From the IMG/VR virus record IMGVR_UViG_3300031576_000001, positions 124,001 to 188,000 of that record: a stretch of DNA of 64,000 nt; one strand, given 5' to 3'. The position numbers and the translations under genes are program-made. Of this stretch, positions 5,729 to 46,083 are shown one piece after another; position 1 is the first letter of the stretch; each line of letters begins with the position of its first letter. Below the pieces are notes generated by a model that was not told the origin of the DNA, did not search any database, and saw nothing but the letters and a program-made list of their open reading frames with translations.

Positions 5729-6987
5729 CAAGTGCTGCCTCTGTCAAAGAGGCATATGAGCGTGAACAAGAAAAGCTACGACACGAAGGCAACCTAGAGG
5801 ATGACGACAGTTCGTTTCCTCTCCCCCAGGAGCCCGAGGTGGACCCCCGGGTCTACAAAAGTGTTGAGCCGCTCTTGTTCCGTGGCTTTCTTGCGTTGCC
5901 TGCCACGCTGGGCGATAACCTACGGGTCGTCTACAAGAGCCTCAACCACCATGAGTATGAGCGCCTACAGCTAACCCATGGGTCAAGGGACACTGACTTT
6001 TACGTAGACTTCCTGGCGCAGTCCACGTACCTCTTGGGGGGTCAGAACGTACTCTCTTGGGAGCACCGTGAGAAGGTCAAGCGGTTTTATGGGGAGGTGC
6101 CCCCTCCATTGCGTAACCGGATCTTGACCACGCTCTCTGAGTTGAACCGGCAGGCCAGTGACGGGGTGCGGCTCGTCGAGGCGTACGCCATGGAGACCCT
6201 CTCTCGGCTACGGTGGGTTCAATTGTACGGTCTGGACCTCACGTCAACGGCGGTAACGGGGGTAGAGGGCTCTTCCTTGCTGGGGTACAACTGGGGTCAG
6301 CTTCTCTGGCGGGCATTGAACCGGTACCAGGACACCCGAGAGGACATGGACAGGCATTGGGAGAACGCCAAATTCATCGGGGGGTGCTTTGCAGGCAAGG
6401 GTATCAACAAGGTCCATAACCAGGACCGGCGCCGCAAGCGCGAAGAGATTGAGAACCGTATCGCGCGGAAGGACCAAATCTTGCGTGAGGTTGTGCTACT
6501 TGAGAAGAGCCCTGAGAGGCGTGTCATGCGGGACGGGCACGTAGTCAAGTCAGCTCAAACGACCGAGGAGCTAGCCACCCAGCTTGAGCAGTCACTAAAG
6601 GGTGAGGAGGACTTTCACGACCGGGTTGTACGGGCTGTCGAAGAGTACCACGCCAAGGTCAGGGTTGACCGTGAGGCTGAGCTACAGCGGCTCTATGACG
6701 AGGCTGCCAGCAAGGCACAGGGTCAAGGGCTCACGGGCATTGTGGACCGTAAGGGTCTCTCCCGCGAAGAGGTTGAGCAGCGTATCGCCCGGACGAGGGC
6801 GATCATGGCTCAAGGAACGGCACAGAGAATGGTACGCCCCCCGCCGCCTAGTGAGAACCCCTACGAGCGTTTCCGTCAAGCGCCCGAGCAAAGCGAGCAA
6901 AGCGAGCAAAGCGAGCAAAGCGAGCAAAGCGAGCCTGGTAGCCCCAAGGGTGAGGTTCGTCCTTTGCCCCCTCTTAGGTCAAGATTA
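5725..6987 (+). CDS. putative second tail assembly chaperone
   Basis: GTGA-coupled to upstream gene; 'YKSLNHHE' resembles the motif in 4835; first in-frame TTA 6985-6987 overlaps the tape-measure ATG as TT-ATG (standard end 7011). Confidence 0.55.
6886..6934 (+). repeat. 9-bp tandem repeat GAGCAAAGC x5 (EQS repeats)
   Basis: Five perfect copies plus GAGC, directly visible. Confidence 0.95.
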
Positions 6988-9900
6988 TGGCAAAGGACAC
7001 TGAGGTTCTGAAGTTTGCGGTCGAGCTAGACCCCAAGAAGGCTATCAAGGCTGCCAAACAGCTACAGACCTCTTGGCAAGAGCTTCAGAAGATACCCAAG
7101 GACTACGCCAAGGACAGCAAGAAGTCCCTTGAGGGTGTGCTCACCAACTTCAATAAGCTCACTCGCGGGATGGAGGACTTCAACAAGGCGGCACTCCAAG
7201 CCAAGAAGAACCCCTTCTTGGATTCCAGCCAAAAAGGCGCCATTCAGAAGACCAAAAACCTGAGCCTGATGTTCGCCAGGCTTAACCACCAAACCAAGGC
7301 GCTAGCCAAGGCAAGGGAGAAGGTACAAGCTAAGTGGGACGACGCTAAGGCAAGCGGGGACACGGCTGAGCTAACTAAACAAGCCAGAATCCTGGGGGAC
7401 ATGGAAGCCAAGGAGCAGAAACTCCTGGCGGCTTTTCAGAAGGAAGCTAAGGCTGCTTCTTCGATTGCAGCGGCGTCCAAGGTGGCGGTAGCCGCTTCAG
7501 CGCAAATACTCAAAGAGGCTAGCGAGAATCTAGAGGAGTATGAGGAGCGCTCGGTCAAGCGTGCCAGTGAGCTACGCAAGGAGCTGATGGGTTACGGGGG
7601 TGAGGAGTTTGGTAAGGACTTCACAGAGAACCTGGAGGGGGGTATGTCTGCCCTAGCCTCTAAGTCAGGGGGTGATTTTGCTAAGTCTGTCATGGGACTC
7701 CTCAAGTCCGGGGGGAAGGGACTAGCTGGCATTAGTACAAGAATGCAAGCTAAAGCTGCTATAACCGGCAAGGAGCCCGGCATGATGGGCAAAGCTGCTG
7801 GGGCGGCTGGCGCGGGTATCGGTAAGATTATGGGGGTATTCTCCAAGCTCGGTCCAGTTATAGGGCTGGTCTCTTCTGCTGTGGTGGGTCTGGTCAAGCT
7901 ATTTATAGATGCGCAAGCCGCTGCCAAGGAGTTCAACAAGGAAATACTCACGGGTGCCTCTACGGCTGAGTTTCTGGCCGCGTCCGGGGGTAAGAGCGCC
8001 ATAGCGTTTGCCAACTTGGAGGACACCATGAAGCAGCTACGGGACGCCGCGTTTGACTACACAACCAATACAGACCTTGGAATATCAAGCAAGGAGCACG
8101 CAGCATTCACCAACACACTGGCCAAAGAGGGTGTATCCCTCAAGCAAATCACAGACGAGGCTGCGCGCTCCAATAAAAGCGTGGGTGACTTTGAGAAGAC
8201 CTTGATTACCTCTGGTGTTGTGTACTCCCGTGTTTTCGGGGTGTCTCTGGACGAGATTGCCTCACTTCAGGCTACTATGCAGGCGGACCTGGGTGTTTCA
8301 TTGAAGACCGCAACCGACCAGTTTGCTGAGATCAATATCGCGATGAAGGACTCGGGTATTGCCGCAAACAAGTTCTTTGGTATCGTGCGTAACCTCTCAT
8401 CCGACATGGGTTTTTTCAATCTTCGTATGGCTGAGGCTGGTAAGCTCTTGAAACTTGTGAGCAAGAGCATGAACGCCAAGCAAGCGGAGAAGTTCATTCA
8501 GAACCTCTCCGGGCACTTCAAGGGCCAGAGCTACGCTGACCGTATCCGTGCAACGCTGGTAGCTGGCAAGGGTCAAAAGGGTGGCGCCATTGCTACAGCC
8601 AAGAACCTGGAGGGTGAGCTACAGGGCAAGATCAAGACCCTTGCCACAGAGGCTCAAGGTAAAGGGGTGAACCCAGAGGGTCTACGTAAAGCTATTGCCG
8701 CTGGGGGTAAAGACCTCACCGACTTTATGGCAGCTAATGCAGAAAAGATGACGGGTGCCATGCGTAGTGAGGTTATAGATGCCTCCAAGCAGTCCCAGCT
8801 TGTCCAGGGTGGCAAGAAAGGCGACCTCTTCAGCTCTGCGCGTGGTTTGAAGAACGCGGGTCCAATAGCCGCCCTCAAGCAATTGGACTCCATTGCTGGC
8901 AATATGTTCGAGGGTAAGAAGTTCAACGAACTTTCAGGGAAAGAGCACTTTGCAATGACTAACCTCCCTGGAGGCGGGACGGAAGAATTGATGGACGAGG
9001 TTGACAAATTCCGCAAGGGTGTTGCGGTGTCAAAAGCGGAGATGCTAAACAAAATCAAAAACGACAAGGCCCTTAGTGAGGATGAGGGGCGTTTGCTCGC
9101 ACAGCTAGGGCTCACGGGTAAGAGCAAAGAGGAAATCTCTAAGGGCGTGGCTGGTGCAGACGAGGAGGACTTTTTCAACTCCATGTCAGCAGATCAAAAG
9201 CGTATTGCACTAGAGGGTGAAAACGCTACGGACTTCGCTAAGAAGCAAACGGGTCTAACGGACACATTGATTTCTAAGCTAGAGCGCCTCAGTGAGTTCT
9301 TGATGAATAAGTATTACAATATAATCGTAGACGTGTATGATGCACTTACTGACATGCCTGGTATGGGGGGCTCCTCTAGGAAAGAGCAAATACGTCAAGA
9401 GACTCTTTCTATGGGCGGTGGGAAACAAATGCTAGACATGCTCACAGGGGGTAGAGGCACTCTGCAAGGCTTGCAAGCTAGCTACTCTAAGGAAACGGAC
9501 CCTCAGAAGCAAGCACAACTGGCTATAGACGTGAACAAGCAACAGATGGCAGTAAACGAAGCCTCTGGAAAAGTGTTGAAAGCTATTACAGGTAAGGGGG
9601 GCACTTTCGGCATTGGGACAAGCGATGCTGAAATGGCTCAGAAGGCGGGTGTGAAAGCTGGGCTATCTGAGGACATGAATCGTAACTTTTCGACGTGGAT
9701 CAAAAAAGGGAAAACAGGAGAAGAAGCTGCAAAGCTCGCTGGTCTCTCTGATGATCAGATGGCAAGAGTTGCTGCGGAGGCTATGAAGACAATGGATGTT
9801 CAAGCTCTTCGGACAGTAACAAGTTGGGGTGTAACAAACACGGGTGTTGGTGCCACCCCTACTGCTAGCACCCCAGGCACTACCCAGGAGCTACCACCGC

Positions 9901-10445
9901 CAGCGCCCGAGGCACAGAAAACTGCCGAAGAGACCGCCAAAGCCGCACAAGCCCAGGTCGCAGCTACCGAGGAGCAAACCAAGGTTCTTGACACCAAGGG
10001 CATCAAGCTCGACAAACCCTTCCTCAAGACCAAGATTGGTCCTCAAGTAGAGGAAAGTACCCTCTCGGCGCTACGTACCGCCCTCTTTGAGTTCTACGTT
10101 CTACAACATACACCGCTGGCAGACGTGGCTGAGGCGATCAAGGGGGGTCTGGACCCCAAGAGCGCAGGCGAGAAGCTAGTCGCCGGCATGAAAGAGCAAG
10201 GCAGTGCATTCAATGCTGGCGAGACCGTCAAGGCTAACGCAGCCGGAGGCACCGTCATGCGTCCCGCCCCAGGTGAAGCGTTTGCCTCCGTAGCCCCAGG
10301 GGAGACAATCGTACCCAAAGGTGGCGGCGCGGGGGGCATCACGATCAACGTCAACGTAGGGGGCGCACCGCTCGCTACGATCATCGAGGGTAAGGTCAAA
10401 GAGGGTATCGAGATTTGGCAACGCCGTGAGGCGATGAGAGCCTTA
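6987..10445 (+). CDS. tape measure protein
   Basis: ~1150 aa, Ala/Lys/Gly-rich and helical, with central hydrophobic segment; first in-frame TTA 10443-10445 followed by CCCC-GTG of next gene (standard code runs to 10733, a 284-nt overlap). Confidence 0.85.
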
Positions 10446-19968: not shown

Positions 19969-20354
19969 GGAATTCTCTGGTACGGGTCAGGGATGACCCT
20001 TGCCTTACGAGGGCTAGCGTCCGCCAAGAGGCTGTTTAGTTTCGTGGCTTGCTTTTGAAAAAACTGGGCTACGCGCTCCAATGCCCAGGTTTTTGCAACG
20101 TCGAGACTGCGCCTTGCGAGGCTTTTTGCGGGCATGTGCCAGACGGCAACCTCTTCGCAGGATTGGTAGCTCAACCAAGCGTACCACTTCCCGGTCAGCG
20201 CAGCGCCTTCCAGGGAAGGCGCGCCCCCCCAAGAGGACAGCTCGACGGCGAAGTTATGGTCAAGGTCATAGGTGTAGGTCGTAACACGCCCACACCCTTC
20301 CTGCTCGGTGTCGAGGAGAACCCTCCACCCCTTAGAGGCTTGTTTGTGGTTCAT
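19965..20354 (-). CDS. hypothetical protein
   Basis: TGATG coupling with upstream gene at 20354. Confidence 0.6.
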   Translation of the reverse strand: MNHKQASKGWRVLLDTEQEGCGRVTTYTYDLDHNFAVELSSWGGAPSLEGAALTGKWYAWLSYQSCEEVAVWHMPAKSLARRSLDVAKTWALERVAQFFQKQATKLNSLLADASPRKARVIPDPYQRIP

Positions 20355-20581
20355 CACCATGGACCCTCTCCAAGTGTCGAGGTCTCTTCCCACTTGATCG
20401 CCTTGAAGGACTCCAGGGAAATCCGGGTGTGGCACTCGGGGCAGAGGAGAAAGTAGGACGTGTCGGCAGCCGGGGTGTGATCGAAGTCCGTGGTACGACA
20501 GTCTTTGAGGGTGAAACCGATCCGGCTCCCGCACCTTTGGCAGGAGCACTGGGCAAACTTCTGTGAGATTTTGTACGCCAT
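20354..20581 (-). CDS. small zinc-ribbon protein
   Basis: CQRC...CPEC. Confidence 0.65.
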   Translation of the reverse strand: MAYKISQKFAQCSCQRCGSRIGFTLKDCRTTDFDHTPAADTSYFLLCPECHTRISLESFKAIKWEETSTLGEGPW

Positions 20582-22246: not shown

Positions 22247-22647
22247 CCCCGGAGAGGGCGTTGGCGGGCTACCCCGTGACAAGGGCGCAAGTCCAGTGGG
22301 GGCTAAAGCTCTACCGGTACGTGGCGGGGTTGCGCTTCTTTGACTTCCCGATCCGGTCGTGGGGCGATGTTCACCCTCACTTGAGGGATTCACCCTGGTT
22401 GAGTAACCAAGGCGTAGCGCCGACGCGCGAAGAGGTCACGGGGGCGTTGCACAACCTCTTGGACCGAGCGATCACGCACAAAGGTGCCGCGCCGACTCCG
22501 AGGAAAGCTGAGTTTGACTACCAGGCTCAGCTTTACCGTGACCAGTGCCGGCTGCAAGACATCGCAAAGAGGGTCCGTGTGTACCAGTTCGAGACCCGCC
22601 AGTGTCGCGAGCGCTTTTCGCACCTCTTGTCCAGGTACGACGACTAA
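22243..22647 (+). CDS. hypothetical protein
   Basis: 134 aa, ends TAA 22645-22647. Confidence 0.65.
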   Translation: MTPERALAGYPVTRAQVQWGLKLYRYVAGLRFFDFPIRSWGDVHPHLRDSPWLSNQGVAPTREEVTGALHNLLDRAITHKGAAPTPRKAEFDYQAQLYRDQCRLQDIAKRVRVYQFETRQCRERFSHLLSRYDD

Positions 22648-23019
22648 GGGCTTCTCGGGTTCACCCTCGGTTTGCCCCTCTGGGTCTGCTTTGCCTTCGG
22701 CGCCCTTGGTTTGGGTTGGACGCAGCCATTTATCCAGGTTGTTACCCAACCCAAACGCCTGGCGTTCCTGGGGGTTGAGCTTCAGGTAGGCGGACTTCAG
22801 CAGTTCCTTCGCGCTCGGGTATGGGCTAAGGACACCCCGGATGATGAACCTCGGCGTACCGTCAGCCTCGCAGAAGGTGAGACTGTGCCTCTCGGCACAC
22901 CCCTCGTGGGTACTAACCGTGTACAGGTGCAGATTGATCAAAGGGCCCCCGTCGTCAAGCTGCGCCTTGTACCAGTCAGCAAAGGTGTCAGCCGTAGAGA
23001 CTTCGTGCAACTCTTTCAT
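22645..23019 (-). CDS. hypothetical protein
   Basis: ATGA-coupled to 23016-23204; first in-frame TTA is the reverse complement of the convergent gene's TAA (standard code gives a 258-nt antisense overlap). Confidence 0.6.
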
Positions 23020-26300: not shown

Positions 26301-29146
26301 ACAGGGTAAAAAGCTACCCCCAAGGCACCCTTGTCCTTTGGGATGGTGAGCCGTACCACGTAGAGGGGGTCAAGCGAGACGGGGGGGTGACGGTGCTCTC
26401 CCTTGGCGCGGCAACCGACCGGGAGTACGCCGGGGTTTCACTGGCGCGCTCTATCCGACCCGTGCTCCCCGGGGGTGCTGCTGTCAGTACCCAGACGCCC
26501 CTCCTTGACGGTGTGGACCTCCTCTACCGCAAGGTGCCAGGTCAGGTAGGCTCCTTGCTAGAGGGGGTTACCGTGACAACCTCGGGTCAAGTGACGGGGC
26601 TACCCCCTCTGGGTGACAGCGAAGAGCAAGGGGTGGCTTACCGTGGGTACGGCAGCCTAGAGGCCGGGCAGAGTCTACGGGCGAGCTACACCGTTAAGAG
26701 GGTGCCTACGGCGAGCAATGGGTACGCCGGGCAAGTCTTGGTCGCCACGTACACCACATGGTCCCCCGATAGCTTTTACTTCCGAGTTGAGAAGCTGTCC
26801 GATGTGCGCGCAGAGGCAGCCCGGCGCCAGCAAGCCGAGGTTTCAGCGAGTCTACCCTCCTCGGGTCCAAGGCTGAGTAATGACCCTGGGTTGACACTAG
26901 CCGACAGGGGGCGAGCCTCGGTCTTCTACGAAGAGAGCGTGTACCGCAACGATGACGTGGCTTTCCGCTCCTTCCTGCTCTTTACCAATGACCTCGTTAC
27001 CCTCTTGGAGAACGCCAGGCTGGATGCTGTAGGGGTCAACGTGGGGGGGCGTGACGGTCAGCTACGGTTCAACGGCTCGCTAACGAACCCAGCGGTCGTG
27101 ACGGTCAGCGTAGCCCTCAATCAGATTGACGACCTGTACCAAGTAAGCCCTGGACCCTACGTGGTGACAGGTCCACCCTTTGTTGTTACGCCGCAGTACA
27201 CCTATGCCCCCGCGTGGACGCCTGCCCCGCAAAGCCGGTTCTTCAAAGCCAAGAGGCGTCCCTTTGGAGTAGCCTCTGTGGCTGCACTACCCGCGCAGGG
27301 TGACGTGGTTCTTGACCTGGGGGTCCGTAACTTGACCCAAGTGTCTTACGTGAGGGACCGGCAACCCTGGGCGCTTGTCACAGCGCCCGCAGCTTCGGGT
27401 GCCTTTACCGTGTCCGTGGATGACGCTGACGGCGACGCCTACCTCGTCCGCCCCAACTTCGGGGTGGGTAATCAAGTAGACCTCCTACGCCCCGATGGGT
27501 CCGTGGTTGGAGGTAGCCCTTACGAGATAGCCTCCCTCACGCCAACCTCCCTCACGTTCACGGTGGCTCTGACAGACAACGTACCCAGGGGGGCAACGGC
27601 GGTACGCTCTTTGGACGACCTGGCGTACTATCAAGTCGGAAAAGACCTTGGGCTAGACGCAACGGGTGGGCTTCTCACTTACATTGTGCCCTTTCCTCCG
27701 CTGGACGGTTCGGTCCCGCTTGTGCCGGCGGCGCTAGAGGTACTCCCCCCCAACCCGGGGCAGCCTCTTAGCACAGAGGTTTTCCTGTCCCCCGCAGCCA
27801 CCACGCCAGACCGCCCCCCGGTGCTGGACGGTCTAGACCTGGACGACGACGGCGAGGTTAGTTTTCCCTTGCAAAGCCCCACGGACGTTTGCGAGCAAAA
27901 CAGCTTGGGGGTGGGCAGGTTGCCTGACGTGTTTGCTCGGTATGCTGCCCTTGTGAGCGTGACGACACCCACGGAGACCTTCACGGCGAATTTGACGGCG
28001 CTCAACGTGATTACCCGGACAAGCGGGAACTTCGGAATCCTGCCGCTACCCGGTCAACTGGTCCGAATCCTCTCCGGGGTACACGCGGGCACCGCCTTTG
28101 TGCGGGTTGCCTCTGCAACCCTAACGGCGATCACGGTGGACGTACCCTACGGCAGCCTCGACACTGGCTTTACTGCGGTTGTAGGGGTCTCTTTGTTCGC
28201 CTTGACCGGCGCAGGCACCGTCATTGCTTTTGGTCTCACGTTGGAGGATGCCGTAGCTACCTTTCAGACCAACGGGGTTCTACCTGGGTACACCGTGGTC
28301 AATACGGTTACACTGGAGAGAAGCCAGGTCACGGCTGTACCGGACGAGACGCACCTGACGCTGGCTTCCCCGTTGACGCTGGGTGCTATCAATTACAGGG
28401 TAGAGAACCCGTTGTGCTCCTTCTCTGCGCTAACCACGCAGTCTACGGCACTCGACAAGCTGAGAGAGGTTGTGGCGACCAATGACCTCCCTGCCCTCCC
28501 CAGTGAGATAAGGGCGCTAGAGAGGGCGCTGGACCTCATATTCACGGACAGGGCAGGTAACCCGGAGTCTGTCACTGTTACGTTGCCCTCCACGGTAACC
28601 GGTCCCGTCTGGTCTGGCGTGACGCCAGGCGACACCGTGTTCTTCCGAGAGGGTGCAAACAGGGGCGTCTACACGGTGGCTTCCGTGGTGGGCACGGTTA
28701 TCACGGTTTCCGGGGCTCTTTCGCTAGCGGGCTCTGACTTCGTTCGGGTGGTCCAGCTAGAGGGCGTGAGCCAAGAGGGCGTAGTTACGCTGGCTAGCCT
28801 CCTCTTTGAAGTAGACGACTACAACTCGGCATTGATCGCGCTGTTGGTCCAACTAGCGAGCTTTCCAGTGCTTTCTGCATCCTACGCCAACAGGCTGGTC
28901 AGCTCAGAGCTGACCCCTTTGCTTGCGGTTCTTGCTGTGCGTGACCCGGCAGCTTGGGAAACTAGGGTCTTTTCCTTTCTCCGTGGGGGAGAGCGTTTGT
29001 ACGACAAGAGGTTTGCGTGGATAGACGGCAGATTGAACAAGTTGACGGGGACGCTGGCTCGGATAGCGCAGGCAAGGCAACGCCGGCTACAGAACCAGGC
29101 CAGCCTGACCAACCAATTGATACGCCTCCTCAGCCTCAGTGGGTTA
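23354..29146 (+). CDS. very large beta-rich virion structural protein (baseplate/tail associated)
   Basis: ATG at 23354 after TGTGCTACC; ~1930 aa of repeated beta domains with helical C-terminus; first in-frame TTA 29144-29146 (standard end 29254). Confidence 0.7.
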
Positions 29147-29268
29147 GGCGTGACAAGCTGCCTATCCAAGAGAAGCTCTCCGACGTGCTTAGAGCCACCA
29201 TTGAGGCTACCAGACAACAAATTGCGCACGAGAAAGCCAAGCTCGCCAGGATGACAGGGAGACGCTAG
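29017..29268 (+). CDS. small coiled-coil protein, start unresolved
   Basis: 'QWVRRDKLPIQEKLSDVLRATIEATRQQIAHEKAKLARM' is helical and TAGTG-coupled to 29268; no clean start outside the upstream gene. Confidence 0.45.
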   Translation: MDRRQIEQVDGDAGSDSAGKATPATEPGQPDQPIDTPPQPQWVRRDKLPIQEKLSDVLRATIEATRQQIAHEKAKLARMTGRR

Positions 29269-31406
29269 TGGCGGATTGGAAGACCTACAAGCTAACCATA
29301 CCGGGCACGGACCTCTTCAAGAAGGTCAGGGACGCCCTAGAGGTACTTGTCGCGCTGTTGGACTTCCTCAAAGCCCTGCTCAACACGGTCAAGGTCTTCC
29401 TGGTAGACTTCGGTAACCCGCTCATCGCGCTCATTCAGGCGCTCATTCTCCTGCTGGAAGCCTTTATCAACTCACTGCGGGCCACGGGGCTATTTGGTTT
29501 GTACCATGTACCGCCCGTGACGTGGGATGACTTCCTCGACTTTTTCAACGGTACGGCGCCCTTTACGGAAGTCTTCAAAGCCAGCCTCTTTGACGGCAAG
29601 GACTACAACCGCCCTCAGCCTATAACGGGGGCTACCAAGAGCGGGTTTATCTTGCTCGTTGTGGATGCTTCCGACGTGGCTACCCTGGTCAGGCGCATAC
29701 AACAACTCCTTGCCCTCTTCGGTAAAGAGTTTGCCGCCCCAAGGCTAAGAGCCCCTCAGAACGTCAAGGTCTTTCCGCTGGACGGTGGCAAAGACCCCTT
29801 GCTGTCACTGCCCGCGGTCTTCGGGTCACCTACCAAGGCTTTGGCAGTCGAGTGGTCCAACCCTACCCAGATTCTCCCGCCGGACCCTGGCTTTGAGGGG
29901 CAGCTAACCTCTCTCCGTGATGAGTTTACCGCCCCTGGCTACCTCATCGAGCGTACCGAGGAGCCCACGGGCAAGACGGTGACCCACGGTGTCGAGCAAA
30001 CCGACCTGAGAGGCAGGGTGAGTACGGCACAGTTTGTAGTCAGGGAGGACAGCGGCAGGCTCTTCAGGGAGTACAGCGCTTACTTCGGGGTCGCTCCGGG
30101 TGACTTTACTGCGACTTTCTTGCTCGGCTCGCTGGGTACGTTCCGGTTTATCGACGACACGGTTGAGAAAGGTAAGCGGTACACTTACCGGGTGAGACCC
30201 TTCCTGGGCGAGCTAGGTCTGGACCCTGTGTTCCATGAAATGCCCTTCCCCCCTCTCCGTGAGAAGCGGTTTGGTTTGCGGCAGTTTGTTCAAGACTACC
30301 CCGGCAAGAACCTGATTCTGGGCGACCCCTCGCCCGAGGCGTCTGGCGTAGTGGCGGACCTCCCGCTTGACTTTGACGTGCTCAACTCGCTTCGCACCCT
30401 GTTCAAGACAGCGTTCTCACTGAACTTTCATTTGCCTTTGCCAGTGGGAGCGACCTTCGATAACAAGGGGTTTCCCACGGGAGTCACGAGCCCCTCTTCG
30501 GTAGGCAAGGGCTCTCTTCTGCCTCTGGCGTCCTCACTGTCCCAGCTTGTGGGTGAGCCTGTTGCGCAGGAAATCCCCCTCACGATAGACAAGACCCCGC
30601 CTGGCGCTGTGCAAAGCTACGAAGAGATAGGCAACCTGCCCCCCAGTAGAGTACCCAAGTTTCCTTGGCAAACCTTTACGGTAAGGCGTCGGGCGAACCA
30701 GCTAGCCATACAAATTGCGGGCGCCATGCTGGACAACCAAGGGACTGCCTCTCGGTACAAGGCGCTCATGACGGGCGGGCTACCCTTCGGTCAAGTGCAG
30801 TTTGGGATTCTGACGAGCGCGATTAACATAGAGGGTCTTACCACGGGGCTAGTACGAGACCCTGGCCCGGGGCTACCGGTAGAGACCCTCAACGGGGCTT
30901 ACAACCTGTACTTCATGGACCCCGTCTACCGGCTCAATGTGCTCGCCGCTGTCAAGTTTGCGTTGACGCTGGCCAGCGTGGGTACGCCGCCAAACTGGGT
31001 AAGCATCTCGGTCTTCAGGGACATTGTGCCGTGGCTGGGGGAGATATTCAACGACATACTCGCCAAGATTCAAGCCCTTGTGGACGCCTACAACGGGGCA
31101 ATCAAGGAGATCAAGGCGTACATTGACTTGATCCAGCGCAAGATTGACGCCCTGGAAAACTTCTTGAAGTTCCTTATCTCGATTCTGGACCAGATCGAGG
31201 CGTTGGAGCTTACCGTTAGCGTGCTCAACTCGGGCACGGTCAACGTGGATGCCTCCGGGTGGGCTGACATTGTGGACAGCGCCTCTACGCAACCCGCCGC
31301 CCCCTCGCGTGACCCTAACGGCTACTCAGCCGGCGTCGCGCTGGCTTACGTAGGCTCCGACGTAAAGGCTTTCGAGACCGCCCTAGAGGCTCTCTTCGGC
31401 AAGTAA
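29268..31406 (+). CDS. putative virion structural protein with N- and C-terminal amphipathic helices and an Fn3-like core
   Basis: 'FIDDTVEKGKRYTYRV' Fn3-type motif; paired helical ends. Confidence 0.65.
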   Translation: MADWKTYKLTIPGTDLFKKVRDALEVLVALLDFLKALLNTVKVFLVDFGNPLIALIQALILLLEAFINSLRATGLFGLYHVPPVTWDDFLDFFNGTAPFTEVFKASLFDGKDYNRPQPITGATKSGFILLVVDASDVATLVRRIQQLLALFGKEFAAPRLRAPQNVKVFPLDGGKDPLLSLPAVFGSPTKALAVEWSNPTQILPPDPGFEGQLTSLRDEFTAPGYLIERTEEPTGKTVTHGVEQTDLRGRVSTAQFVVREDSGRLFREYSAYFGVAPGDFTATFLLGSLGTFRFIDDTVEKGKRYTYRVRPFLGELGLDPVFHEMPFPPLREKRFGLRQFVQDYPGKNLILGDPSPEASGVVADLPLDFDVLNSLRTLFKTAFSLNFHLPLPVGATFDNKGFPTGVTSPSSVGKGSLLPLASSLSQLVGEPVAQEIPLTIDKTPPGAVQSYEEIGNLPPSRVPKFPWQTFTVRRRANQLAIQIAGAMLDNQGTASRYKALMTGGLPFGQVQFGILTSAINIEGLTTGLVRDPGPGLPVETLNGAYNLYFMDPVYRLNVLAAVKFALTLASVGTPPNWVSISVFRDIVPWLGEIFNDILAKIQALVDAYNGAIKEIKAYIDLIQRKIDALENFLKFLISILDQIEALELTVSVLNSGTVNVDASGWADIVDSASTQPAAPSRDPNGYSAGVALAYVGSDVKAFETALEALFGK

Positions 31407-38414: not shown

Positions 38415-38708
38415 TAAGCAAGGCGTGGTGTCGGAACCCTCTTCGGTCGCCGTGCTGGACAACTTCTGCGGAGAGAGCAGCATACTGGCGTAAGCCTTGC
38501 ATACGAGAACGTCGAGACGGCGTAGACGATTAGCCTCTTTGCTCAGGCGGATAGCCTCCGCTTGGTCGCGTGCCTGGCAGATCAGGTCGGCAACATCCCT
38601 CATGTGGATCACGCCCAAGAGGAGGTACATGAAGTTCTCGACGACTCCGTTGAGCTTGTCTAGCTCGTAAGGGGTGGCGCCGTGGTTGGGTTTGGGGTTC
38701 TCGGTCAT
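38415..38708 (-). CDS. hypothetical protein
   Basis: ATG at 38708 coupled to upstream gene; first in-frame TTA 38415-38417 removes overlap with baseplate J (standard end 38370). Confidence 0.55.
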
Positions 38709-38974
38709 AACTCGTCCTCTACACCGCAGGCGTTCAGGTCGCTCGGAGGGAACACACGCACTTCCACCGTCTTGACCTCGGGCGTGACCCCAAGGTACTT
38801 TTTGACCCAAGCCTCCCCGTTGCCCTTGCGCACGTCCATCTTGAAGACCGGAGGCAGCCCGTGAAACCTTGGGTAGGGTAGCGGGGCGTCGCCCGGGGGG
38901 TACAGGAACACCTTGTCATGCGTGGGGTACACGTAAACCACCACGCGAGCAATCGGCAGACTGAGAGGCAACAT
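38708..38974 (-). CDS. hypothetical protein
   Basis: ATG after GTGTAAGGGGG; ends GAG-TTA-TGA (standard end 38705). Confidence 0.65.
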
Positions 38975-39438: not shown

Positions 39439-40602
39439 ATGACTGAGGGTTACGGACGAGACGACTACGGCAGGGGTCGCTACGGCTCTACGCCAGCGCT
39501 GGGGCTTACCAATGCCTTCTCGCTGGGTCCAACCTCGGCGGTATTGCAGTTCACGGCGCCCCTGGACCTTACCCACGGGTCCACGCTGGACCCGCTGTCC
39601 TACAGTATACCGGGGCTCACGGTTCTCTCGGTCCAAGTCCTCTTCCCTGACGTACTCCGGCTGGTCACGACGGTTCAAGGGTGGGTTCTGTACGAGGTCA
39701 CGGTACACCCCTCAGTCAGGAGTACCTCTCGGCTACCCATAGAGATTGACCAGCGCGTAGACACCTTCTCTGGGTACGCCACGACCCCCTCCTTCTTTGC
39801 TACGGCGCAAAGCAGCACAAGGGTCCAGGTCATTGCCGGGGCGGACCTCCTTAGTGACCTGGCGCTGGCCGCAGCCTCGTCCTACCAAGTCTTTGACCTC
39901 CTGGGCAACCCGGTACCCGTCATCCTGGCGACGCCTCGTACCTACCTTGGGGTGACAAGGCGGGTAGACCTTGACCTGGGCGTAGCCCTCCTACCCAACC
40001 AGTTCTACCGGGTGGTCGTGGCCAACGTGGTTTTCACGGTGGACGGTCGAAACCTCGTGCCTAACGAGGCAACCTTCCTGTGGAAGCCCAAGCCGTTGAC
40101 GGTAGCGGCAGCCATCCCCGACTTCAGCGGAGAGGTCTCCGGGGGGCTCTTTGGTACGCCGGCAGGCTTGGTCTTCTTCTCGCCCTCCCTAGAGGACGTA
40201 GCCCCTCTCAGCGCTATACAGATCGACGAGCTATCGGTTTGTAGTCGTGCCTACGAGGTCTATGAGTACCCAAAGCCAGTTGACCCCTTGCCCCTGTCCA
40301 CCTTCGGGGGCTACAACCCAGGGCAGACCAACAACACGGCGTATGTCCTGTGGGCTCCCTTCCCCAGACTAAACGAAGCCAAGATGGCGCTGTCTGCCAT
40401 CTACCCCGAGGTCTACGCCGGGGCTAACAGTGGTCGCTGCGTTGCCGTGCTAGACGAGCCTCATGACCCCCTCTTGGTATCCCTGCTCAATAACCCCTAC
40501 TGGCAGACCTTCGGTACGGGCGTCCTGCACCCCTTCAAGACAGCTAGTAACCTGGCACCTATACCAGCCGGCACCACAACCACAATCACCATCGTCCCCT
40601 TA
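39439..40602 (+). CDS. Ig-like-domain virion protein
   Basis: YG-repeat N-terminus; two Ig-like repeats; first in-frame TTA 40600-40602 (standard end 40635 overlaps next ATG). Confidence 0.65.
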
Positions 40603-41267: not shown

Positions 41268-41302
41268 TATGTACTCTTTCTTTCACCTAGAGGGCTTCTG
41301 AC

Positions 41303-43909
41303 ATGACATTCAAAGAATACGGTCCTGGGGTGTCTGGTTACCTCGACCCCGAGGAAAGAGCATTCCTGACAGGTGTATTTCAGTCCGCCAAGCCAGTGCT
41401 TGACACAGAGCTGAACCTGGCTTCAGACCTTGAGGACCAGATTAGCCAGGGAGTCCCTCTCAGTGGTACACCCTCTGGGTGGCTCACGCGAGACGCTATC
41501 GACCAGCCTGATAACTTCCCCATCTTTCAGGCTGTAGGCGCGTCAAATACCCTGCAAGTCTCAGGTCCGCTACTAGCTAACGTGAATGGTTGGCTTGTCC
41601 GTGTCACCAACACGGGTATCGCCCCTGGTAACCAGCTAGACCTTGGGGCGGGACCGGCGGGTGCGGCTTCCAAGAGGGTGGACTTTGTACTTCTAGAGGT
41701 TTGGCTAAGGCTTCTCTCGGCGGCTCCGTCTACGGTAGGCAAGAGCCCAGCGGCTCGAATCTGGCGTAACGGTAACGTCAAAGTGTCTCCGGCTGACGAT
41801 CTGGTAGTCAACTTCCCTGATGACATACTCGACGTGAATGTGGGCTCCGAGACGACCAAGAGGGTACAGGTACAATACCGTCTCAGGGTGGTTCAGGGGG
41901 TGGACCTCTTTAGTTACCCGGACGGGATGAGTGACCCCCTCATTGTAGCCCGCACGGTGCCCCCCAACGCGGCGACCCCAGACGGGGCAGTGCCCCCGGC
42001 GCTCTACCCTTACCAGAACCAGGACGCTAACGGGGACACTGGGCTCTGGCGGGCTGGCCTTGGGGACGCAACGTCGGCTTCCGACCTGGGGACCGTGGAT
42101 GGGTTTATGTACGCCATCCCCTTTGCGGCTGTTTTCCGTAGAAACACAACCGCTTTTGCCAAGAACAGTAACCATAATGGGGGTATACTCTCCCCCGGAC
42201 CTAGCGACCGCCCCGATGGTCTCTTTCACAACGTCATTGTCCTAGACGACGTGGCGGACCTACGGCGCCTTGTAGCCTCGGAGTCGTGGTCCCTTCCCGA
42301 AGTTCTACAGCGCAACCTTCGGCTCATGCTGGACAACCAACTGAGAACCGAGTGGGAAGAGACCCCCAACGGGGGCGGGGTGTGGGGTCACAGTAATCTC
42401 TGGGCAGACGAGATTGGGCCCGTAGACACGCCTGGCGCTACACTCATCGGTGATTTTGACGCAGTGCTCCGTAGGTTCAGTGACCGGGCTGTCCTAGAGA
42501 TAGCCACGCTGAGGATCACTGGACCCTTCGTGGACGGGCAAGTCATCACCCTCAACCCCACCGTGCTCCCTGTCTACCCTTACGCGGCTTTCAACTGGGC
42601 GTCCTTTGCACCCTCTGAGGTACGCTGGCTCGACGTGGTAAGCGCCCGCTTTGACGGAGAGGGTGTTGCCGGGGCTACCCACGTTGACGCCCCTATCGTG
42701 ACCATGACCGGCTTTGGTACGGACCCGGTAGGTCCAGTGACACTCACGCTGGGCACGGTCTCGACCATACCCATCACGACGGAGGCGCTCTACGTTGACC
42801 TCCTGATAGCATATCCCAACTTTAGGGGTGCTCAAGGCAGTGGCTTGACCCGTACCCCAGTAGCTAACTACCCCTTGGACGTTACCGGGGCGAGCGGGGC
42901 GGTACAGATCAACAACCCGGTGCAACTACCGGCTGCCGCACCCATCCTCTTTAGCCAGCTAAACGTGGGGTCAGACTTCTCACACCGAGAGGTACGGCTA
43001 CAATACGAAACCCTCTCTCAGGTCGTGCTGGTCAATGCCCCGGCTGCCGTGGGTGTCTCGACGATTGACCTCCCCGAGAGGGCACTAGCTATAACGCTCA
43101 TTGAGCGTAGTCCTTTCCCTGGTCCGTTTGCACCCATCGTGGGGGGGTTTACAATAGACGCCTCGGGGCGCGTAGTCACGCTGACCAACCCGGCAGACTT
43201 TACAACCACCGTGTTGGATCGATGGCGCGTGACCCTGCAAGCGGTGCGCCCTCTACCGCAAAACGGCGAGCAACTGACGCTGTACTACCCCGCGAGGGCA
43301 CCCCAGGCGGTACGAAGTGCCTTGCTGGGCGTCGCCAAGGTTTTTCACCCCAAGCTCGTTGGGGACACCTTGCTAGCCATCACTACGGGTAGCGGTAGCC
43401 AGGGAGAGGGTTACCCATTCCCTTACGCTTACGTGCAAACAGGGGGTGTTTACCCCACGTCAATTGGTACGTTTGGCGGTGAGCATGAGCTAGACGGTCC
43501 CGCGACTCTCTCTGTGTCGGACTTCAACGCCACCACAGGCTGGCTCAAACTTCACCCCTACGTGGGGTACGAGCCCACTGGACCTGTCACCTTTACCAGG
43601 GCGCCCACCGACGCTGACATAGAGGGACGTAGCTTCTTTACGGGCGTACCACCTGGGGACTACATACCCAACACGTTTGCACAATTGCTGAGCGACCCCT
43701 CGCGTCACAAAAACGTACTACCCCTCCTCTTGGAGCTACCGTTTGCCAGTCCGCCTCTGGGCTCGCAGGGTGCCTTGTACTTCGGAATCCTCATGAGGTG
43801 GGCCATGGACGCTCAAAACTCGGTCGTTATGAACCCCGACTTGACACTCAACACCACCACACTGTCCATCTTCCGTACCAAGGGTCTCTTGACCGGAAGG
43901 AAGGCGTTA
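41303..43909 (+). CDS. tail fibre/baseplate-attached protein, paralog of 53823
   Basis: N-terminal 'VFQSAKPVLDTELN' baseplate-docking-type motif; first in-frame TTA 43907-43909 overlaps next ATG as TT-ATG (standard end 43993). Confidence 0.7.
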
Positions 43910-46083
43910 TGCCCTCAAGTGCAAACCCCGCCATCGTCGTCAACCCGGGTCCAGGTAAGTCTCTCCCTGGTCAGGTACAGGTGGGCTCACTAGGAGGGAT
44001 TATCAGTACCAGCGCTGACCTGTCAGCGCACATTTTGGACCCCCAGGACGCTCACTTTGCTGGCGCTATCGGGGTACCGACGACCTACCCCCCCACGGGG
44101 GCGCCCCTCCTCTCCTCGGTGGGGGGTCCGTTTGACGGGGAGTCGGTTCTGGACGTTTTGGTTCAAGTTGCCGGCTTGTTGCCCTCTGCGCCTGACCGTC
44201 TAGGCTTTGACGGCGCCGTGGTCAACTCAGGGGTCACCAATTGGGGTGCCCTTGGGTTGAACGCTCTTACGGGGGGGTTTGCTAACGGAGCCGCGGTACG
44301 GTTCACCAAGAACCTGTTGCCTGACCCTGTCGCTAGCTTTACGGCGCAAGGTAACCTTTACCCTGCTGACCGTGGGGTCTTGGCCGTGTACACCAGCACA
44401 ACGGGCAACTTCCTTGACGGTGCCTCTACGCTGGTTGGCGCTCTTTGGCTAGGAAGCACCGCGAGTCAGCCGGTAGCGCTCACGGTAGCCTCAGCGAACT
44501 TCTCAGAGATAAACCGTGATGCCGGGCAGGGGGACTATGTACCCTCTCTGGTAGGTACGGACAAGCTAGCCCTGACCTTCCGGCTGCCTGTGCTCTCTGA
44601 CTACAGTGCCTTTCCGCTATCAGGGTACGCTAACTTCCCTCAGAGGTTTACGCACTACCAGCTAGCACAGTACGCAATAGCGTCACCCGCGCTGGCCCCA
44701 GGCGACAACGGCTCCATTCTCTTCGCGCATTGGAAGCCAGCCTTTGCCGTGTCGGATGCCGCGATTGCAGGTGGCAACCTTACCCTGGTAACGCTGACCA
44801 GTACCAATGCTTACTCAGCAGTACCCACGCTAGGTGACTTTGACACCGGGGACGTGGTTACCCTCAATAGGCGGTTTATCTTCAGTGACGCGGACAGCGG
44901 TACGGCACCTTCGGGGGTTGGTTTCGCTTCCGCTCTGGCCAACTCCCCGAGCACCAAGTTTCTGTCGGGCATAGCCTACATGGACGGTGCGGCGGCACCC
45001 CTATTCAACATTGACGTGCAGTTCAATGACTTGTTCAACGACTCGTTCAACACGGACGCTACGCCTGACGGGGTGAATACCCCTCTTGGGTTTGGTTCCC
45101 TGGTCAACCCCGTAGCCCTTGACTTCTCCCGGCTAGGCAACAGCACACTGCAAGAGAAGAGCTACAACGAGCTACAGCAAGCCGGCGGTTCACCGTACAC
45201 CCCTGCCTTCTCCCCGCAACCCGGACACACCGGAGAGCTATCTTTGCTAGGCATTAGCCCCGGTGTGCTCTCCCCTATCTTCACTCGCACCGGAACGATC
45301 AGGGTACACCTACGCAAGCCGTACCAACCAGCGGTCTTGTATATCGACACCACCAACTTCCTGGTCAATACGTACCCCAACCCGCCCTCTGTGCTCAACC
45401 CCACCACGGAAACCAAAGAGACCTTCAAGGACGAGTTCTACCGTTACCTAACCACGGTAAGCGTAGCGACCACCAAGGATCTCGTACCAGGGGGCGGTGA
45501 TGTTTACGTTTCCGCCTCTACGCTGGCGCTGGGTGACGGCAACCTCCAAGTAGATGCCTCCAAGCTAGTGTACCCCCAAGGGGACTACAGCAGCCCCGCC
45601 CTGTACCTACCCACACCTCAGCCGGATTACTCTAGCTTTCCAGCGTCAGACCCCTTGAGCCACATTCGGAGCTACGTCCGGGCGTTCAACACAACTCAGG
45701 TGGTCAACAAGGGAAAACTACGGATCAAGGGCGTAGTGCCCGCTGCCTTTGCAGCTACCACCGCTTGGACGGGGGACCGGGTGGCGGACCACCTAGGGGG
45801 GATGGTGGTCGAGTTGTTCTTCCAAGACGCTGACGGACCCACGGTCAAGCGTGCTGACCTGGGGCGACCCAAGGGGAGCCCGGACCTTCTCTCCGAGGAC
45901 ACGCGCGGCTGTCTGGTAGGCAAAGAGGGTTCTGGCGTGGACTGGACGTACACGTTTGAGCTTCCGTGGTTCAACTGGAAAGCTGCGAGTGGTAAGTGCC
46001 CCCTATTTGTCAGGGTCTCGTACTTCAAGAGCGCTGGCGTAAGTCACGAAGTCACGGAAGTTGAGTACCTTCCTCTTGTCTAA
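43909..46083 (+). CDS. virion structural protein (fibre-associated)
   Basis: ATG at 43909 after GGAAGG; 'AHILDPQDAHFAGAI' His motif typical of trimeric fibres. Confidence 0.65.
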   Translation: MPSSANPAIVVNPGPGKSLPGQVQVGSLGGIISTSADLSAHILDPQDAHFAGAIGVPTTYPPTGAPLLSSVGGPFDGESVLDVLVQVAGLLPSAPDRLGFDGAVVNSGVTNWGALGLNALTGGFANGAAVRFTKNLLPDPVASFTAQGNLYPADRGVLAVYTSTTGNFLDGASTLVGALWLGSTASQPVALTVASANFSEINRDAGQGDYVPSLVGTDKLALTFRLPVLSDYSAFPLSGYANFPQRFTHYQLAQYAIASPALAPGDNGSILFAHWKPAFAVSDAAIAGGNLTLVTLTSTNAYSAVPTLGDFDTGDVVTLNRRFIFSDADSGTAPSGVGFASALANSPSTKFLSGIAYMDGAAAPLFNIDVQFNDLFNDSFNTDATPDGVNTPLGFGSLVNPVALDFSRLGNSTLQEKSYNELQQAGGSPYTPAFSPQPGHTGELSLLGISPGVLSPIFTRTGTIRVHLRKPYQPAVLYIDTTNFLVNTYPNPPSVLNPTTETKETFKDEFYRYLTTVSVATTKDLVPGGGDVYVSASTLALGDGNLQVDASKLVYPQGDYSSPALYLPTPQPDYSSFPASDPLSHIRSYVRAFNTTQVVNKGKLRIKGVVPAAFAATTAWTGDRVADHLGGMVVELFFQDADGPTVKRADLGRPKGSPDLLSEDTRGCLVGKEGSGVDWTYTFELPWFNWKAASGKCPLFVRVSYFKSAGVSHEVTEVEYLPLV

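What the first reader, a model, noticed from the sequence alone, without database searches (positions are those of the whole stretch)
6985..43911. TT-ATG translational coupling mimics TA-ATG/TG-ATG stop-start overlaps
Three junctions place the next gene's ATG on the last base of the upstream in-frame TTA: AGA-TTA-TG (6985, chaperone to tape measure), GCG-TTA-TG (43907) and GAG-TTA-TGA (minus strand, 38708). This is the geometry of 1-nt stop/start coupling, also seen here as TGATG at 20354 and TAGTG at 29268. It is independent positional evidence that ribosomes terminate at TTA.
Basis: partly seen in the sequence, partly recalled or inferred. Interest (0 to 1): 0.8.

Follow-up and report, generated by a model that had tools for sequence, protein, structure and literature searches.

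The report
Phage uses TTA as stop codon
In this 323-kb phage from a cave metagenome, and in one related phage, the leucine codon TTA is essentially absent inside genes but ends about a quarter of them, so the TT-ATG junctions are real stop/start overlaps and the phage appears to use TTA as a fourth stop codon, a code so far listed only for one mitochondrion.

Summary
Two of them (6985 and 43907) are true gene boundaries. In the related phage G001:C1 the upstream genes end with TAG and TGA at the same codon, and the downstream N-termini are conserved. The third (38708, minus strand) reads TTA-TGA. It is also an ordinary ATGA overlap, so it decides nothing.

The three junctions are weak evidence alone, but the conclusion holds genome-wide:
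- In-frame TTA is about 5-7 times rarer than off-frame TTA, and 59% of in-frame TTAs lie in the last 30 codons of standard-code ORFs (7% for all codons; p 3e-46).
- Coding signal stops at the TTA.
- No Pfam domain spans any of the internal TTAs tested, and only one orthologue alignment crosses a TTA as a sense codon. That single case also lies inside a Pfam domain.
- Over 100 DnaB homologues end exactly at a TTA.
- TTA interchanges with TAA/TAG/TGA at 21 of 57 orthologous gene ends.
- The window's own TAGTG junction (29268) is TTATG in the relative.
- Eighty related huge-phage loci and the putative host lack the pattern.

The code equals NCBI table 23. How the peptide is released is unknown. 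I found no report of TTA as a stop in phages or bacteria.

The parts
6985..6989 (+). TTATG junction. TTA (6985-6987) ends the 420-aa gene 5725..6987, weakly like a tail-assembly chaperone. ATG (6987-6989) starts the tape-measure-like gene 6987..10445.
   Evidence: The G001 orthologue ends with TAG at the same codon, followed by a 10-nt spacer and an ATG with a conserved N-terminus. Protein-atlas features resemble tape measure proteins at 0.95 and tail-assembly chaperones at only 0.75. No Pfam or PHROG hit.
43907..43911 (+). TTATG junction. TTA ends the 868-aa gene 41303..43909. ATG starts the 724-aa gene 43909..46083, preceded by a GGAAGG ribosome-binding site.
   Evidence: The G001 orthologue (62% identity over 882 aa) ends with TGA at exactly this codon, then tcc ATG, with a conserved MPS start. 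The Logan assembly of the same run is identical here.
38705..38710 (-). TTA-TGA tandem with an ATG overlap between the small genes 38708..38974 and 38415..38708. It is not diagnostic because it is also an ATGA overlap in the standard code.
   Evidence: No orthologue in G001:C1.
10443..10445 (+). TTA end of the tape-measure-like gene. The next gene starts at GTG 10450. In the standard code the ORF would run 96 codons into that gene.
   Evidence: The orthologue also ends with TTA here, and the downstream gene is conserved in another frame.
29144..29146 (+). TTA end of the 1922-aa gene 23378..29146.
   Evidence: The orthologue ends with TGA, with C-termini within 5 aa.
29266..29270 (+). Standard TAGTG 1-nt stop/start overlap: a small conserved gene followed by the 712-aa gene 29268..31406.
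   Evidence: The same junction in G001 reads TTATG, with a conserved downstream N-terminus MA(D/T)WK.
53186..53194 (+). TTA gcc ATG. This ends the 2363-aa gene 46097..53188 and starts the 205-aa gene 53192..53809 in the same frame.
   Evidence: G001 has TTA tcgcc ATG, so the two genes lie in different frames there and are separate genes.
62661..62663 (+). TTA end of the 198-aa gene 62067..62663. The standard ORF runs 18 codons further.
   Evidence: Twenty-one homologues in other huge phages end at offset 0 from this TTA. The orthologue is TTA too.
58140..58142 (+). TTA end of the 1439-aa gene 53823..58142, with TAA two codons later, so it is not discriminating.
40600..40602 (+). TTA end of the 387-aa gene 39439..40602.
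   Evidence: The orthologue ends with TTA at the identical position after a conserved ...TITxVP.
4788..4790 (+). TTA end of the 227-aa gene 4107..4790.
   Evidence: The orthologue pair is TTA/TTA.
61407..61409 (+). TTA end of the 115-aa gene 61062..61409.
   Evidence: gene model only.
22645..22647 (-). TTA end of the 124-aa gene 22645..23019. Further minus-strand TTA ends lie at 38415-38417, 58161-58163, 59241-59243, 62675-62677 and 63703-63705.
   Evidence: gene model only.
20352..20356 (-). In-frame ATG and GTG codons also lie 3-6 nt upstream.

Best explanation
In this phage lineage TTA no longer serves as a leucine codon. It marks the end of translation and is used alongside TAA, TAG and TGA, so the code is table 11 plus TTA as a stop, the same form as NCBI table 23. 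About 28% of the genes in this genome end with TTA. The TT-ATG junctions at 6985 and 43907 are therefore genuine 1-nt stop/start overlaps of the TAATG/TGATG kind, which fits termination-reinitiation coupling. Shown from sequence: genes end at TTA, and TTA is exchangeable with standard stops over evolutionary time. Inferred: the ribosome releases the peptide at UUA. The release route is unknown. My best guess is that UUA has no decoder in the infected cell and a host release or rescue activity ends translation there. The phage's own 38-tRNA array serves the five other leucine codons but not UUA.
For: (1) In 209 long ORFs in-frame TTA occurs 115 times in 84,212 codons, against 756 and 546 in the two off-frames. 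Of these, 68 (59%) lie in the last 30 codons, against 7.4% for all codons and 12.6% for the next-highest codon; p 3e-46.
(2) Coding log-odds are +0.34 per codon before the TTA and -0.13 between the TTA and the next standard stop.
(3) Of the in-frame TTAs in standard-code gene calls, 94 are ends of four-stop genes, 21 lie beyond such an end and 3 lie in the first 8-21 codons.
(4) No Pfam domain spans an internal TTA in the ten ORFs tested. One example is ThyX | TTA | CxxCxxCC.
(5) DnaB: about 120 homologues of 481-502 aa align over at least 94% of the 484-aa query. The eleven aligned, and 25 control-locus homologues (median offset 0), end at the TTA codon. The closest relative has TGA there. 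The next relative has TTA-TG plus a 110-aa junk tail.
(6) A 198-aa window gene: 21 homologues end at offset 0 from its TTA.
(7) Orthologues against the related phage G001:C1: 57 coincident C-termini. TTA pairs with TTA 12 times and with a standard stop 21 times. TTA is the only recurrent codion aligned exactly to the partner's stop, 8 times. No TTA-split ORF pair maps to one orthologue.
(8) Named junctions: TTA against TAG at 6985, TTA against TGA at 43907, TAGTG against TTATG at 29268, and a frame change at 53186.
(9) The relative shows the same bias, 41 of 74, p 7e-27. Eighty related huge-phage loci do not, including those at 55-60% GC.
(10) This is not an assembly artefact. A second assembler gives identical sequence, and the relative is an independent NCBI assembly.
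(11) Extra in-frame standard stops just downstream are no commoner after TTA than after standard stops.
(12) The 39 phage tRNAs include Leu-GAG, Leu-UAG, Leu-CAG and Leu-CAA but no Leu-UAA.
Against: Nothing here observes translation; there are no proteomic or ribosome-profiling data. One gene, the L5 gp82-like PF25735 gene at genome 305121..305582, carries an in-frame TTA inside its conserved domain. That codon aligns to a CTG leucine in the relative. So TTA may sometimes be read as Leu, or this gene is broken. No release-factor domain is detected in the phage, and no GGQ motif is conserved in any of 123 orthologue pairs. The bacterium co-assembled with the relative is Lysinibacter-like. It has canonical RF1 and RF2 and uses TTA as Leu, even at the conserved Leu of RITHLPTG in prfB. 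A simple host-code explanation therefore does not fit that candidate host. Bacterial release factors are not known to accept U at the second codon position (my own knowledge). The genome is only about 68% complete.
Confidence: 0.85

Rival explanations
1. Hungry or conditional codon. UUA is still leucine in principle, but its tRNA is scarce, cleaved or excluded during infection. Ribosomes stall at UUA, and the protein is freed by rescue or drop-off, or is read through at a low level. TTA would then be a leaky or regulated terminator and not a reassigned stop.
For: The putative host reads TTA as Leu. The phage has no release-factor-like gene. One conserved-domain gene has an internal TTA aligned to Leu. 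Both phages carry RNA-repair-type genes: HAD_SAK_2, a 2H phosphoesterase and an AAA_33 domain. UUA pausing is used for regulation in Streptomyces and a Streptomyces phage (PMC10732093). TTA-ended genes are less often tightly followed by a start, 16% against about 32%.
Against: Backup standard stops are not enriched after TTA, as they should be for a leaky terminator. TTA is the most frequent or second most frequent gene end in both phages, 27 of 57 and 18 of 57 in orthologues, which is hard to reach if each use costs a stalled ribosome. tmRNA-type rescue would tag the products for degradation (my own knowledge).
Confidence: 0.3
2. Host-wide code. The real host is a bacterium whose own genetic code has TTA as a stop, and the phage simply follows it. 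Co-binning of the relative with the Lysinibacter-like genome would then be misleading.
For: It needs no phage-encoded machinery, and none was found. The host assignment rests only on co-assembly, similar GC, similar leucine codon preference and the shared cave habitat.
Against: No such bacterial code turned up in the literature searched. The only candidate host sequence available uses TTA as an ordinary sense codon with a flat positional distribution. G001 has just one RF1 and one RF2, so there is no sign of a second organism in that assembly.
Confidence: 0.2
3. Standard code. TTA is a rare leucine codon, the ORFs run on to the next TAA, TAG or TGA, and the TT-ATG junctions are chance overlaps.
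For: Every TTA-ended gene has a standard stop downstream, as expected by chance. The junction at 38708 is an ordinary ATGA overlap.
Against: The positional bias has p 3e-46. The tails are unconserved, non-coding-like and overlap downstream genes by up to 96-110 codons. Homologues end at the TTA. TTA is exchanged with stops, not with leucine codons.
Confidence: 0.03
4. Artefact. Systematic sequencing, assembly or base-modification error writes TTA where the DNA has a standard stop.
For: The genome is a single metagenome assembly at about 11x depth.
Against: An independent assembler gives identical sequence over 38300-44200. An independent NCBI assembly of a relative, at about 50% protein identity, shows the same pattern. 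Motif-based errors cannot be frame-specific, yet there are roughly 1,300 off-frame TTAs against almost no internal in-frame ones.
Confidence: 0.01

Closest known systems
NCBI translation table 23 (Thraustochytrium aureum mitochondrial code)
   Same: The codon table is identical in form: the bacterial table 11 with TTA as an additional stop. I checked this with Biopython, and TTA is the only difference.
   Different: Table 23 belongs to an organelle with its own small translation system. Here the user is a 323-kb tailed phage that must use a bacterial host's ribosomes and, as far as can be seen, the host's release factors. The mechanism is unknown in both cases.
Stop-codon-recoded phages (TAG or TGA read as an amino acid; codes 15 and 4; Lak, crAss-like and other phages; e.g. 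bioRxiv 10.1101/2021.08.26.457843, PMC8346664)
   Same: It is a phage lineage whose code apparently differs from its host's. It has a large phage tRNA set and even carries a tRNA with a CUA anticodon.
   Different: The direction is opposite, sense to stop and not stop to sense. No in-frame TAG or TGA was seen in conserved genes of this genome. A suppressor tRNA cannot produce the effect. It needs loss of decoding plus release.
Unassigned codons in GC-rich or AT-rich bacteria (for example AGA and AUA in Micrococcus luteus, CGG in Mycoplasma capricolum; my own knowledge, not checked here)
   Same: A rare codon disappears from coding sequence and has no tRNA. This is a plausible intermediate stage. 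The closest relative fragment L021 has no in-frame TTA at all.
   Different: Here the codon has been taken back into use in a positive way, at the ends of a quarter to a half of the genes.
UUA as a regulatory hungry codon in Streptomyces (bldA) and in Streptomyces phage terminase bypassing (PMC10732093)
   Same: The context is actinobacterial, UUA is rare, and effects at UUA depend on tRNA availability. That paper also describes a upstream ORF with a UUA a few nucleotides before a main-ORF start.
   Different: There UUA lies inside genes and is finally decoded as Leu or bypassed. Here it lies at gene ends, aligned with standard stops, and is absent from gene interiors.
Stop/start overlaps used for translational coupling (ATGA, TAATG, TGATG)
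   Same: The geometry is the same. The last base of the terminator is the first base of the next ATG, and the junction is interchangeable with TAGTG between orthologues.
   Different: The terminator is TTA, and only the 1-nt overlap is possible with it. Coupling itself was not tested.

Membership tests
Genetic code with TTA as stop (table 23 type) | TTA is absent from conserved sense positions of genes. | tested here: met
   Standard-model genes contain 94 TTAs at gene ends, 21 beyond an end and 3 near the 5' end. No Pfam domain spans a TTA in the ten ORFs tested. No orthologue alignment spans one, apart from the L5 gp82-like gene.
Genetic code with TTA as stop (table 23 type) | TTA coincides with the C-termini of homologues and with standard stops of orthologues. 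| tested here: met
   DnaB, a 198-aa window gene, 21 TTA-to-standard-stop interchanges in 57 orthologue pairs, and the named junctions.
Genetic code with TTA as stop (table 23 type) | No tRNA decodes UUA. | tested here: inconclusive
   The phage tRNA set lacks Leu-UAA, but the genome is about 68% complete. The putative host uses TTA as Leu and so presumably has the tRNA. The host tRNA genes were not scanned.
Genetic code with TTA as stop (table 23 type) | A release activity acts at UUA, giving proteins that end before the TTA. | not testable with these tools
   No RF-1 or PCRF domain is present and no GGQ motif is conserved. Showing release needs proteomics, ribosome profiling or in vitro release assays.
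Stop-codon-recoded phage (TAG or TGA read as an amino acid) | In-frame TAG or TGA within conserved genes. | tested here: not met
   No stop-split ORF pair of G000 maps to one G001 orthologue. One TAG-split gene was seen in G001 only. TAG pairs with stops at orthologous gene ends.
Stop-codon-recoded phage (TAG or TGA read as an amino acid) | A suppressor tRNA is encoded. | tested here: met
   A tRNA with anticodon CUA lies at genome 307803-307877 (-), in an intergenic gap. Its function is untested.
1-nt stop/start overlap (translational coupling) | The upstream terminator shares its last base with the true start of a real downstream gene. | tested here: met
   At 6985 and 43907 the downstream N-termini are conserved from that ATG, and the upstream orthologues stop at the same codon. 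The junction at 38708 is ambiguous.
1-nt stop/start overlap (translational coupling) | Downstream translation depends on upstream termination. | not testable with these tools
   This needs reporter assays.
bldA-type regulatory UUA, or UUA-triggered bypassing or frameshifting | UUA lies inside a gene whose product continues beyond it, in the same or a shifted frame. | tested here: not met
   Sequence after the TTA is non-coding-like. Downstream genes have their own conserved starts, and their frame relative to the upstream gene varies between the two phages. The only candidate is the L5 gp82-like gene.

The most novel reading that the evidence does not exclude
A lineage of huge phages has reassigned a sense codon (UUA, leucine) to stop while infecting a bacterium that itself reads UUA as leucine. 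That would be the first sense-to-stop code change outside an organelle. It would imply that the phage, or the infected-cell state, removes UUA decoding and provides or recruits a release activity for a codon with U at the second position. Such a change could also shut down the roughly 40% of host genes I estimate to carry a TTA, including prfA and prfB.
Probability: 0.5. Interest if true: 0.95.

Novelty: new variant of a known kind. Interest (0 to 1): 0.9.

Why it matters
All phage code changes described so far turn a stop codon into an amino acid and are explained by suppressor tRNAs. A sense codon turned into a stop is known only from a few mitochondria. It cannot be produced by a tRNA. It requires that the codon lose its decoder and gain a release route.

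If confirmed, three things follow:
- It would give an experimentally approachable system for asking how a bacterial ribosome can terminate at UUA.
- It would show a new way for a virus to separate its own translation from its host's.
- It has a practical consequence now. Standard gene callers mis-annotate about a quarter of the genes of these phages, giving false C-terminal tails of up to 110 residues, fused genes and false long overlaps.

The positional statistic used here is the share of a codon's in-frame occurrences that fall in the last 30 codons of ORFs. It is a cheap screen that could be run over all viral and bacterial genomes to find other sense-to-stop codes, which alignment-based code predictors cannot see.

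Tried and rejected
- Close DNA relatives among GenBank phages: none.
- Related loci via the 868-aa window protein in IMG/VR: none.
- DnaB as a single query in IMG/VR, GTDB genomes and JGI metagenomes: only distant phages or the contig itself.
- PHROG and Pfam on most window proteins: almost no hits, so family-based C-terminus checks were limited.
- Phage-encoded release factor: no RF-1 or PCRF domain, and no GGQ motif conserved between the two phages.
- A Pfam sweep of 69 conserved proteins found nothing related to translation termination.
- TAG recoding through the CUA tRNA: not supported in this genome.
- Backup-stop enrichment after TTA: not significant.
- A +1 frameshift to TAG at TTAG as the real terminator: rejected, because 37% of TTA ends are followed by C and 15% by T.
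- A strict rule that TTA followed by A is sense: rejected, because two TTA-A ends in G001 are confirmed gene ends by orthology.
- Apparent sense TTAs in alignments: shadow ORFs opposite real genes or positions upstream of the true start, except one.
- Read laying gave only contigs of the source run, so it supports the assembly but is not an independent sample.
- No RNA run holding the sequence was listed, but that search (kind 'any') did not query RNA runs specifically.
- Literature: no report found of TTA or UUA as a stop in phages or bacteria.
Full report
**What the window is**

The window is bases 124001-188000 of a single 322,633-bp contig with 58.6% GC. The contig is an IMG/VR virus record, judged about 68% complete, and was assembled from a cave metagenome. 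The window holds tail and baseplate genes:
- a gp6-like baseplate wedge protein;
- an SLT-domain protein;
- a 1152-aa protein whose language-model features resemble tape measure proteins at 0.95;
- upstream of it, a 420-aa protein with only a weak resemblance (0.75) to tail-assembly chaperones.

**The observation**

- At 6985 the standard-code ORF continues 8 codons past the TTA to a TGA.
- At 43907 it continues 28 more codons to a TAG. A GGAAGG ribosome-binding site precedes the ATG.
- At 38708 (minus strand) the TTA is followed at once by TGA. In the standard code this is an ordinary ATGA overlap, so it proves nothing either way. No orthologue could be found to test it.

| Junction | Count |
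|---|---|
| TTATG | 5 |
| CTATG | 1 |
| GTATG | 1 |
| ATATG | 2 |

Fisher p is 0.03 against all NTATG sites and 0.004 given an upstream coding frame. By the ORF-end criterion there are 7 TTATG junctions in this genome and 12 in the related phage. This enrichment is real but modest.

**The genome-wide signal is far stronger**

- In 209 long, non-overlapping standard-code ORFs (84,212 codons), in-frame TTA occurs 115 times. The two off-frames have 756 and 546.
- Sixty-eight of the 115 (59%) lie in the last 30 codons of their ORF. The figure for all codons is 7.4% and for the next most end-biased codon 12.6%. The binomial p is 3e-46.
- Codon-usage log-odds are +0.34 per codon in the 20 codons before such a TTA. 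They fall to -0.13 between the TTA and the next standard stop.
- When genes are called with four stops, 104 of 374 end in TTA (TGA 159, TAA 61, TAG 50), and long gene overlaps drop from 38 to 25.
- Of all in-frame TTAs inside standard-code gene calls, 94 are ends of four-stop genes, 21 lie beyond such an end, and 3 lie in the first 8-21 codons.
- Several internal TTAs are followed within a few codons by a ribosome-binding site and an ATG in the same frame, for example TTA gcc ATG at window 53186.
- TTA ends are spread over the whole genome and all gene sizes.

**Homologues**

- No Pfam domain spans any internal TTA in the ten ORFs tested. In one 490-codon ORF, ThyX lies before the TTA and a CxxCxxCC domain after it. 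In another, a DNA polymerase III delta C-terminal domain ends 5 residues before the TTA.
- The DnaB helicase at genome 193819..195273 is decisive. About 120 homologues of 481-502 aa cover at least 94% of the TTA-terminated 484-aa query, whereas the standard-code call for this gene is 519 aa.
- In the alignment, eleven homologues end at the residue before the TTA.
- The closest relative is a 9.3-kb contig with 67% identity. It has GTG TGA where this phage has GTG TTA. The next relative has 52% identity and has ATC TTA TGG there, a TT-ATG junction. In the standard code that gene gains a 110-residue low-complexity tail.
- Using 80 related huge-phage loci as a reference set, 25 DnaB homologues end at offset 0 from the TTA. 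Twenty-one homologues of the 198-aa window gene 62067..62663 also end at offset 0, although its standard ORF runs 18 codons further.

**A related phage as an independent replicate**

The 52% relative is contig 1 (205,069 bp, 58.3% GC) of NCBI assembly GCA_040400085.1. It shows the same bias: 74 in-frame TTAs, 41 of them in the last 30 codons, p 7e-27.

Of 123 reciprocal-best orthologue pairs, 57 have coincident C-termini under the four-stop reading:

| Pairing of gene ends | Pairs |
|---|---|
| TTA with TTA | 12 |
| TTA with TAA, TAG or TGA | 21 |
| Standard stop with standard stop | 24 |

- TTA is the only codon that recurs at the position aligned exactly with the partner's standard stop, 8 cases.
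- No ORF pair split by a TTA maps onto a single orthologue.

- **6985:** the orthologue ends with TAG, followed by a 10-nt spacer and an ATG. The downstream N-terminus ...EVL(K/E)FA is conserved.
- **43907:** the orthologue ends with TGA at the identical codon, followed by tcc ATG with the conserved start MPS.
- **53186:** the downstream gene lies in the same frame here and in a different frame in the relative, so the two are separate genes.
- **29268:** the window's standard TAGTG junction is TTATG in the relative, with the conserved downstream start MA(D/T)WK.

**Negative controls**

- Eighty loci from related huge phages (DnaB identity 30-54%, GC 31-68%) show no end bias. This includes loci at 55-60% GC, which have 9-28 in-frame TTAs of which 0-3 are terminal. 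The property is therefore specific to this small lineage.
- The closest fragment, L021, has no in-frame TTA at all in 2,269 codons. It may represent an unassigned-codon stage.

**Artefact excluded**

- A second assembler's contigs from the same run are identical over 38300-39065 and 39161-44200; only short fragments cover the gap between, one with a G>A difference.
- The relative is an independent assembly.
- A motif-level error could not be frame-specific.

**Host and mechanism**

The rest of GCA_040400085.1 is a bacterium. Its RF2 falls in a cluster at 90% identity or more with RF2 of Lysinibacter cavernae, a Microbacteriaceae species. L. cavernae was isolated from a cave (my own knowledge).

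Its contigs have similar GC and the same unusual preference for CTC over CTG, but they use TTA as an ordinary codon. There are 77 in 50,654 codons with a flat positional distribution. One sits at the conserved Leu of RITHLPTG in prfB, and the RF1 and RF2 motifs are canonical (PAT, SPF, GGQ). If this bacterium is the host, the change is phage-specific.

What the phage does and does not carry:
- It carries 39 tRNAs. These include Leu tRNAs for CTN and TTG but none for TTA.
- It has no RF-1 or PCRF domain.
- No GGQ motif is conserved in any orthologue pair.
- The shared proteins include RNA-repair-type domains but nothing that points to termination.

TTA ends have a weak sequence context:
- A is rare at the base after the codon (3% against 19-21% after standard stops, p 2e-5).
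- The next three bases are C-rich.
- A Trp codon precedes 9 of 104 TTA ends (p 3e-5).
- Backup stops are not enriched.

How release happens is therefore open. I favour loss of UUA decoding in the infected cell combined with a host release or rescue activity. An unrecognised phage factor, or a different host with the same code, remains possible.

**The one exception**

An L5 gp82-like gene (PF25735, E 2e-22) has a TTA at codon 63 of its ORF. The codon lies inside the domain and aligns to a CTG leucine in the relative. Either this gene is inactivated, or TTA can still be read as leucine under some conditions.

**Comparison with what is known**

- The inferred table equals NCBI table 23, the Thraustochytrium mitochondrial code, which differs from table 11 only by TTA as a stop.
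- Phage code changes described so far go from stop to sense.
- Full-text searches found no report of TTA or UUA as a stop in a phage or bacterium.
- The nearest actinobacterial phenomenon is UUA as a tRNA-limited regulatory codon in Streptomyces and a Streptomyces phage (PMC10732093). There the codon lies inside genes.

**Verdict**

The feature is a new variant of a known kind of system, an alternative genetic code in a virus, with a direction of change not previously seen outside organelles. What is shown is where the gene products end. That ribosomes release the peptide at UUA, and how they do so, is inferred.

Noticed in passing
L020:3803-3877 (genome 307803-307877, minus strand; outside the window): A tRNA with anticodon CUA, like an amber suppressor. 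It has a good cloverleaf and sits alone in an intergenic gap of about 700 bp, far from the 38-tRNA array at genome 21-31 kb. TAG still behaves as a stop in orthologue comparisons.
   Followed up: partly
L020:1121-1582 (genome 305121-305582, +); TTA at L020:1307-1309: An L5 gp82-like gene (PF25735) has an in-frame TTA inside its conserved domain, followed by A. The codon aligns to a CTG leucine in the related phage. It is the only credible sense-position TTA found.
   Followed up: partly
window 59244-59768 (-), and elsewhere in the genome: A HAD_SAK_2 domain of the 'Swiss Army Knife' RNA-repair type. The proteins shared with the relative also include a 2H phosphoesterase (LigT-like), AAA_33 (PNK-like), NADAR and NUDIX domains. 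This hints that RNA or tRNA damage and repair matter in this phage-host pair.
   Followed up: no
genome-wide (104 TTA gene ends): TTA ends have a sequence context. A is almost absent at the next base and rare over the next four. A TGG (Trp) codon precedes 9 of 104 TTA ends. The related phage shows the same trend more weakly.
   Followed up: partly
window 6900-6935 (+): A 9-nt tandem repeat, AAGCGAGCA about four times, encodes SEQ repeats near the C-terminus of the chaperone-like gene.
   Followed up: no
window 2997-4103 (+); genome 77631-80552 (+): An HNH / endonuclease VII-like gene lies among the structural genes. A 973-aa protein carries Hint/intein domains. SNF2 helicase, PolA and DnaB homologues in related phages also carry inteins.
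   Followed up: no
L021 (Logan contig of SRR29476925, 9.3 kb): The closest DnaB relative (67% identity) has no in-frame TTA in 2,269 codons and no TTA gene ends. It may be a stage at which the codon is merely unassigned, or the sample may simply be too small.
   Followed up: partly
G001:C1, ORFs g1_314/g1_315: In the related phage one gene is split by a single in-frame TAG, while the orthologue here is continuous (residues 1-166 and 168-244). This could be a read-through, a suppressed TAG or a pseudogene.
   Followed up: no
L035, L036 (G001 contigs C9 and C17): The putative host's prfA and prfB each contain one TTA codon. In prfB it encodes the conserved Leu of RITHLPTG. Loss of UUA decoding during infection would therefore block new synthesis of the host's own release factors.
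   Followed up: partly
genome-wide gene model: TTA-ended genes are followed by a start within -1 to +15 nt about half as often as genes with standard stops (16% against about 32%). This could be biological, or it could come from my crude start prediction.
   Followed up: no
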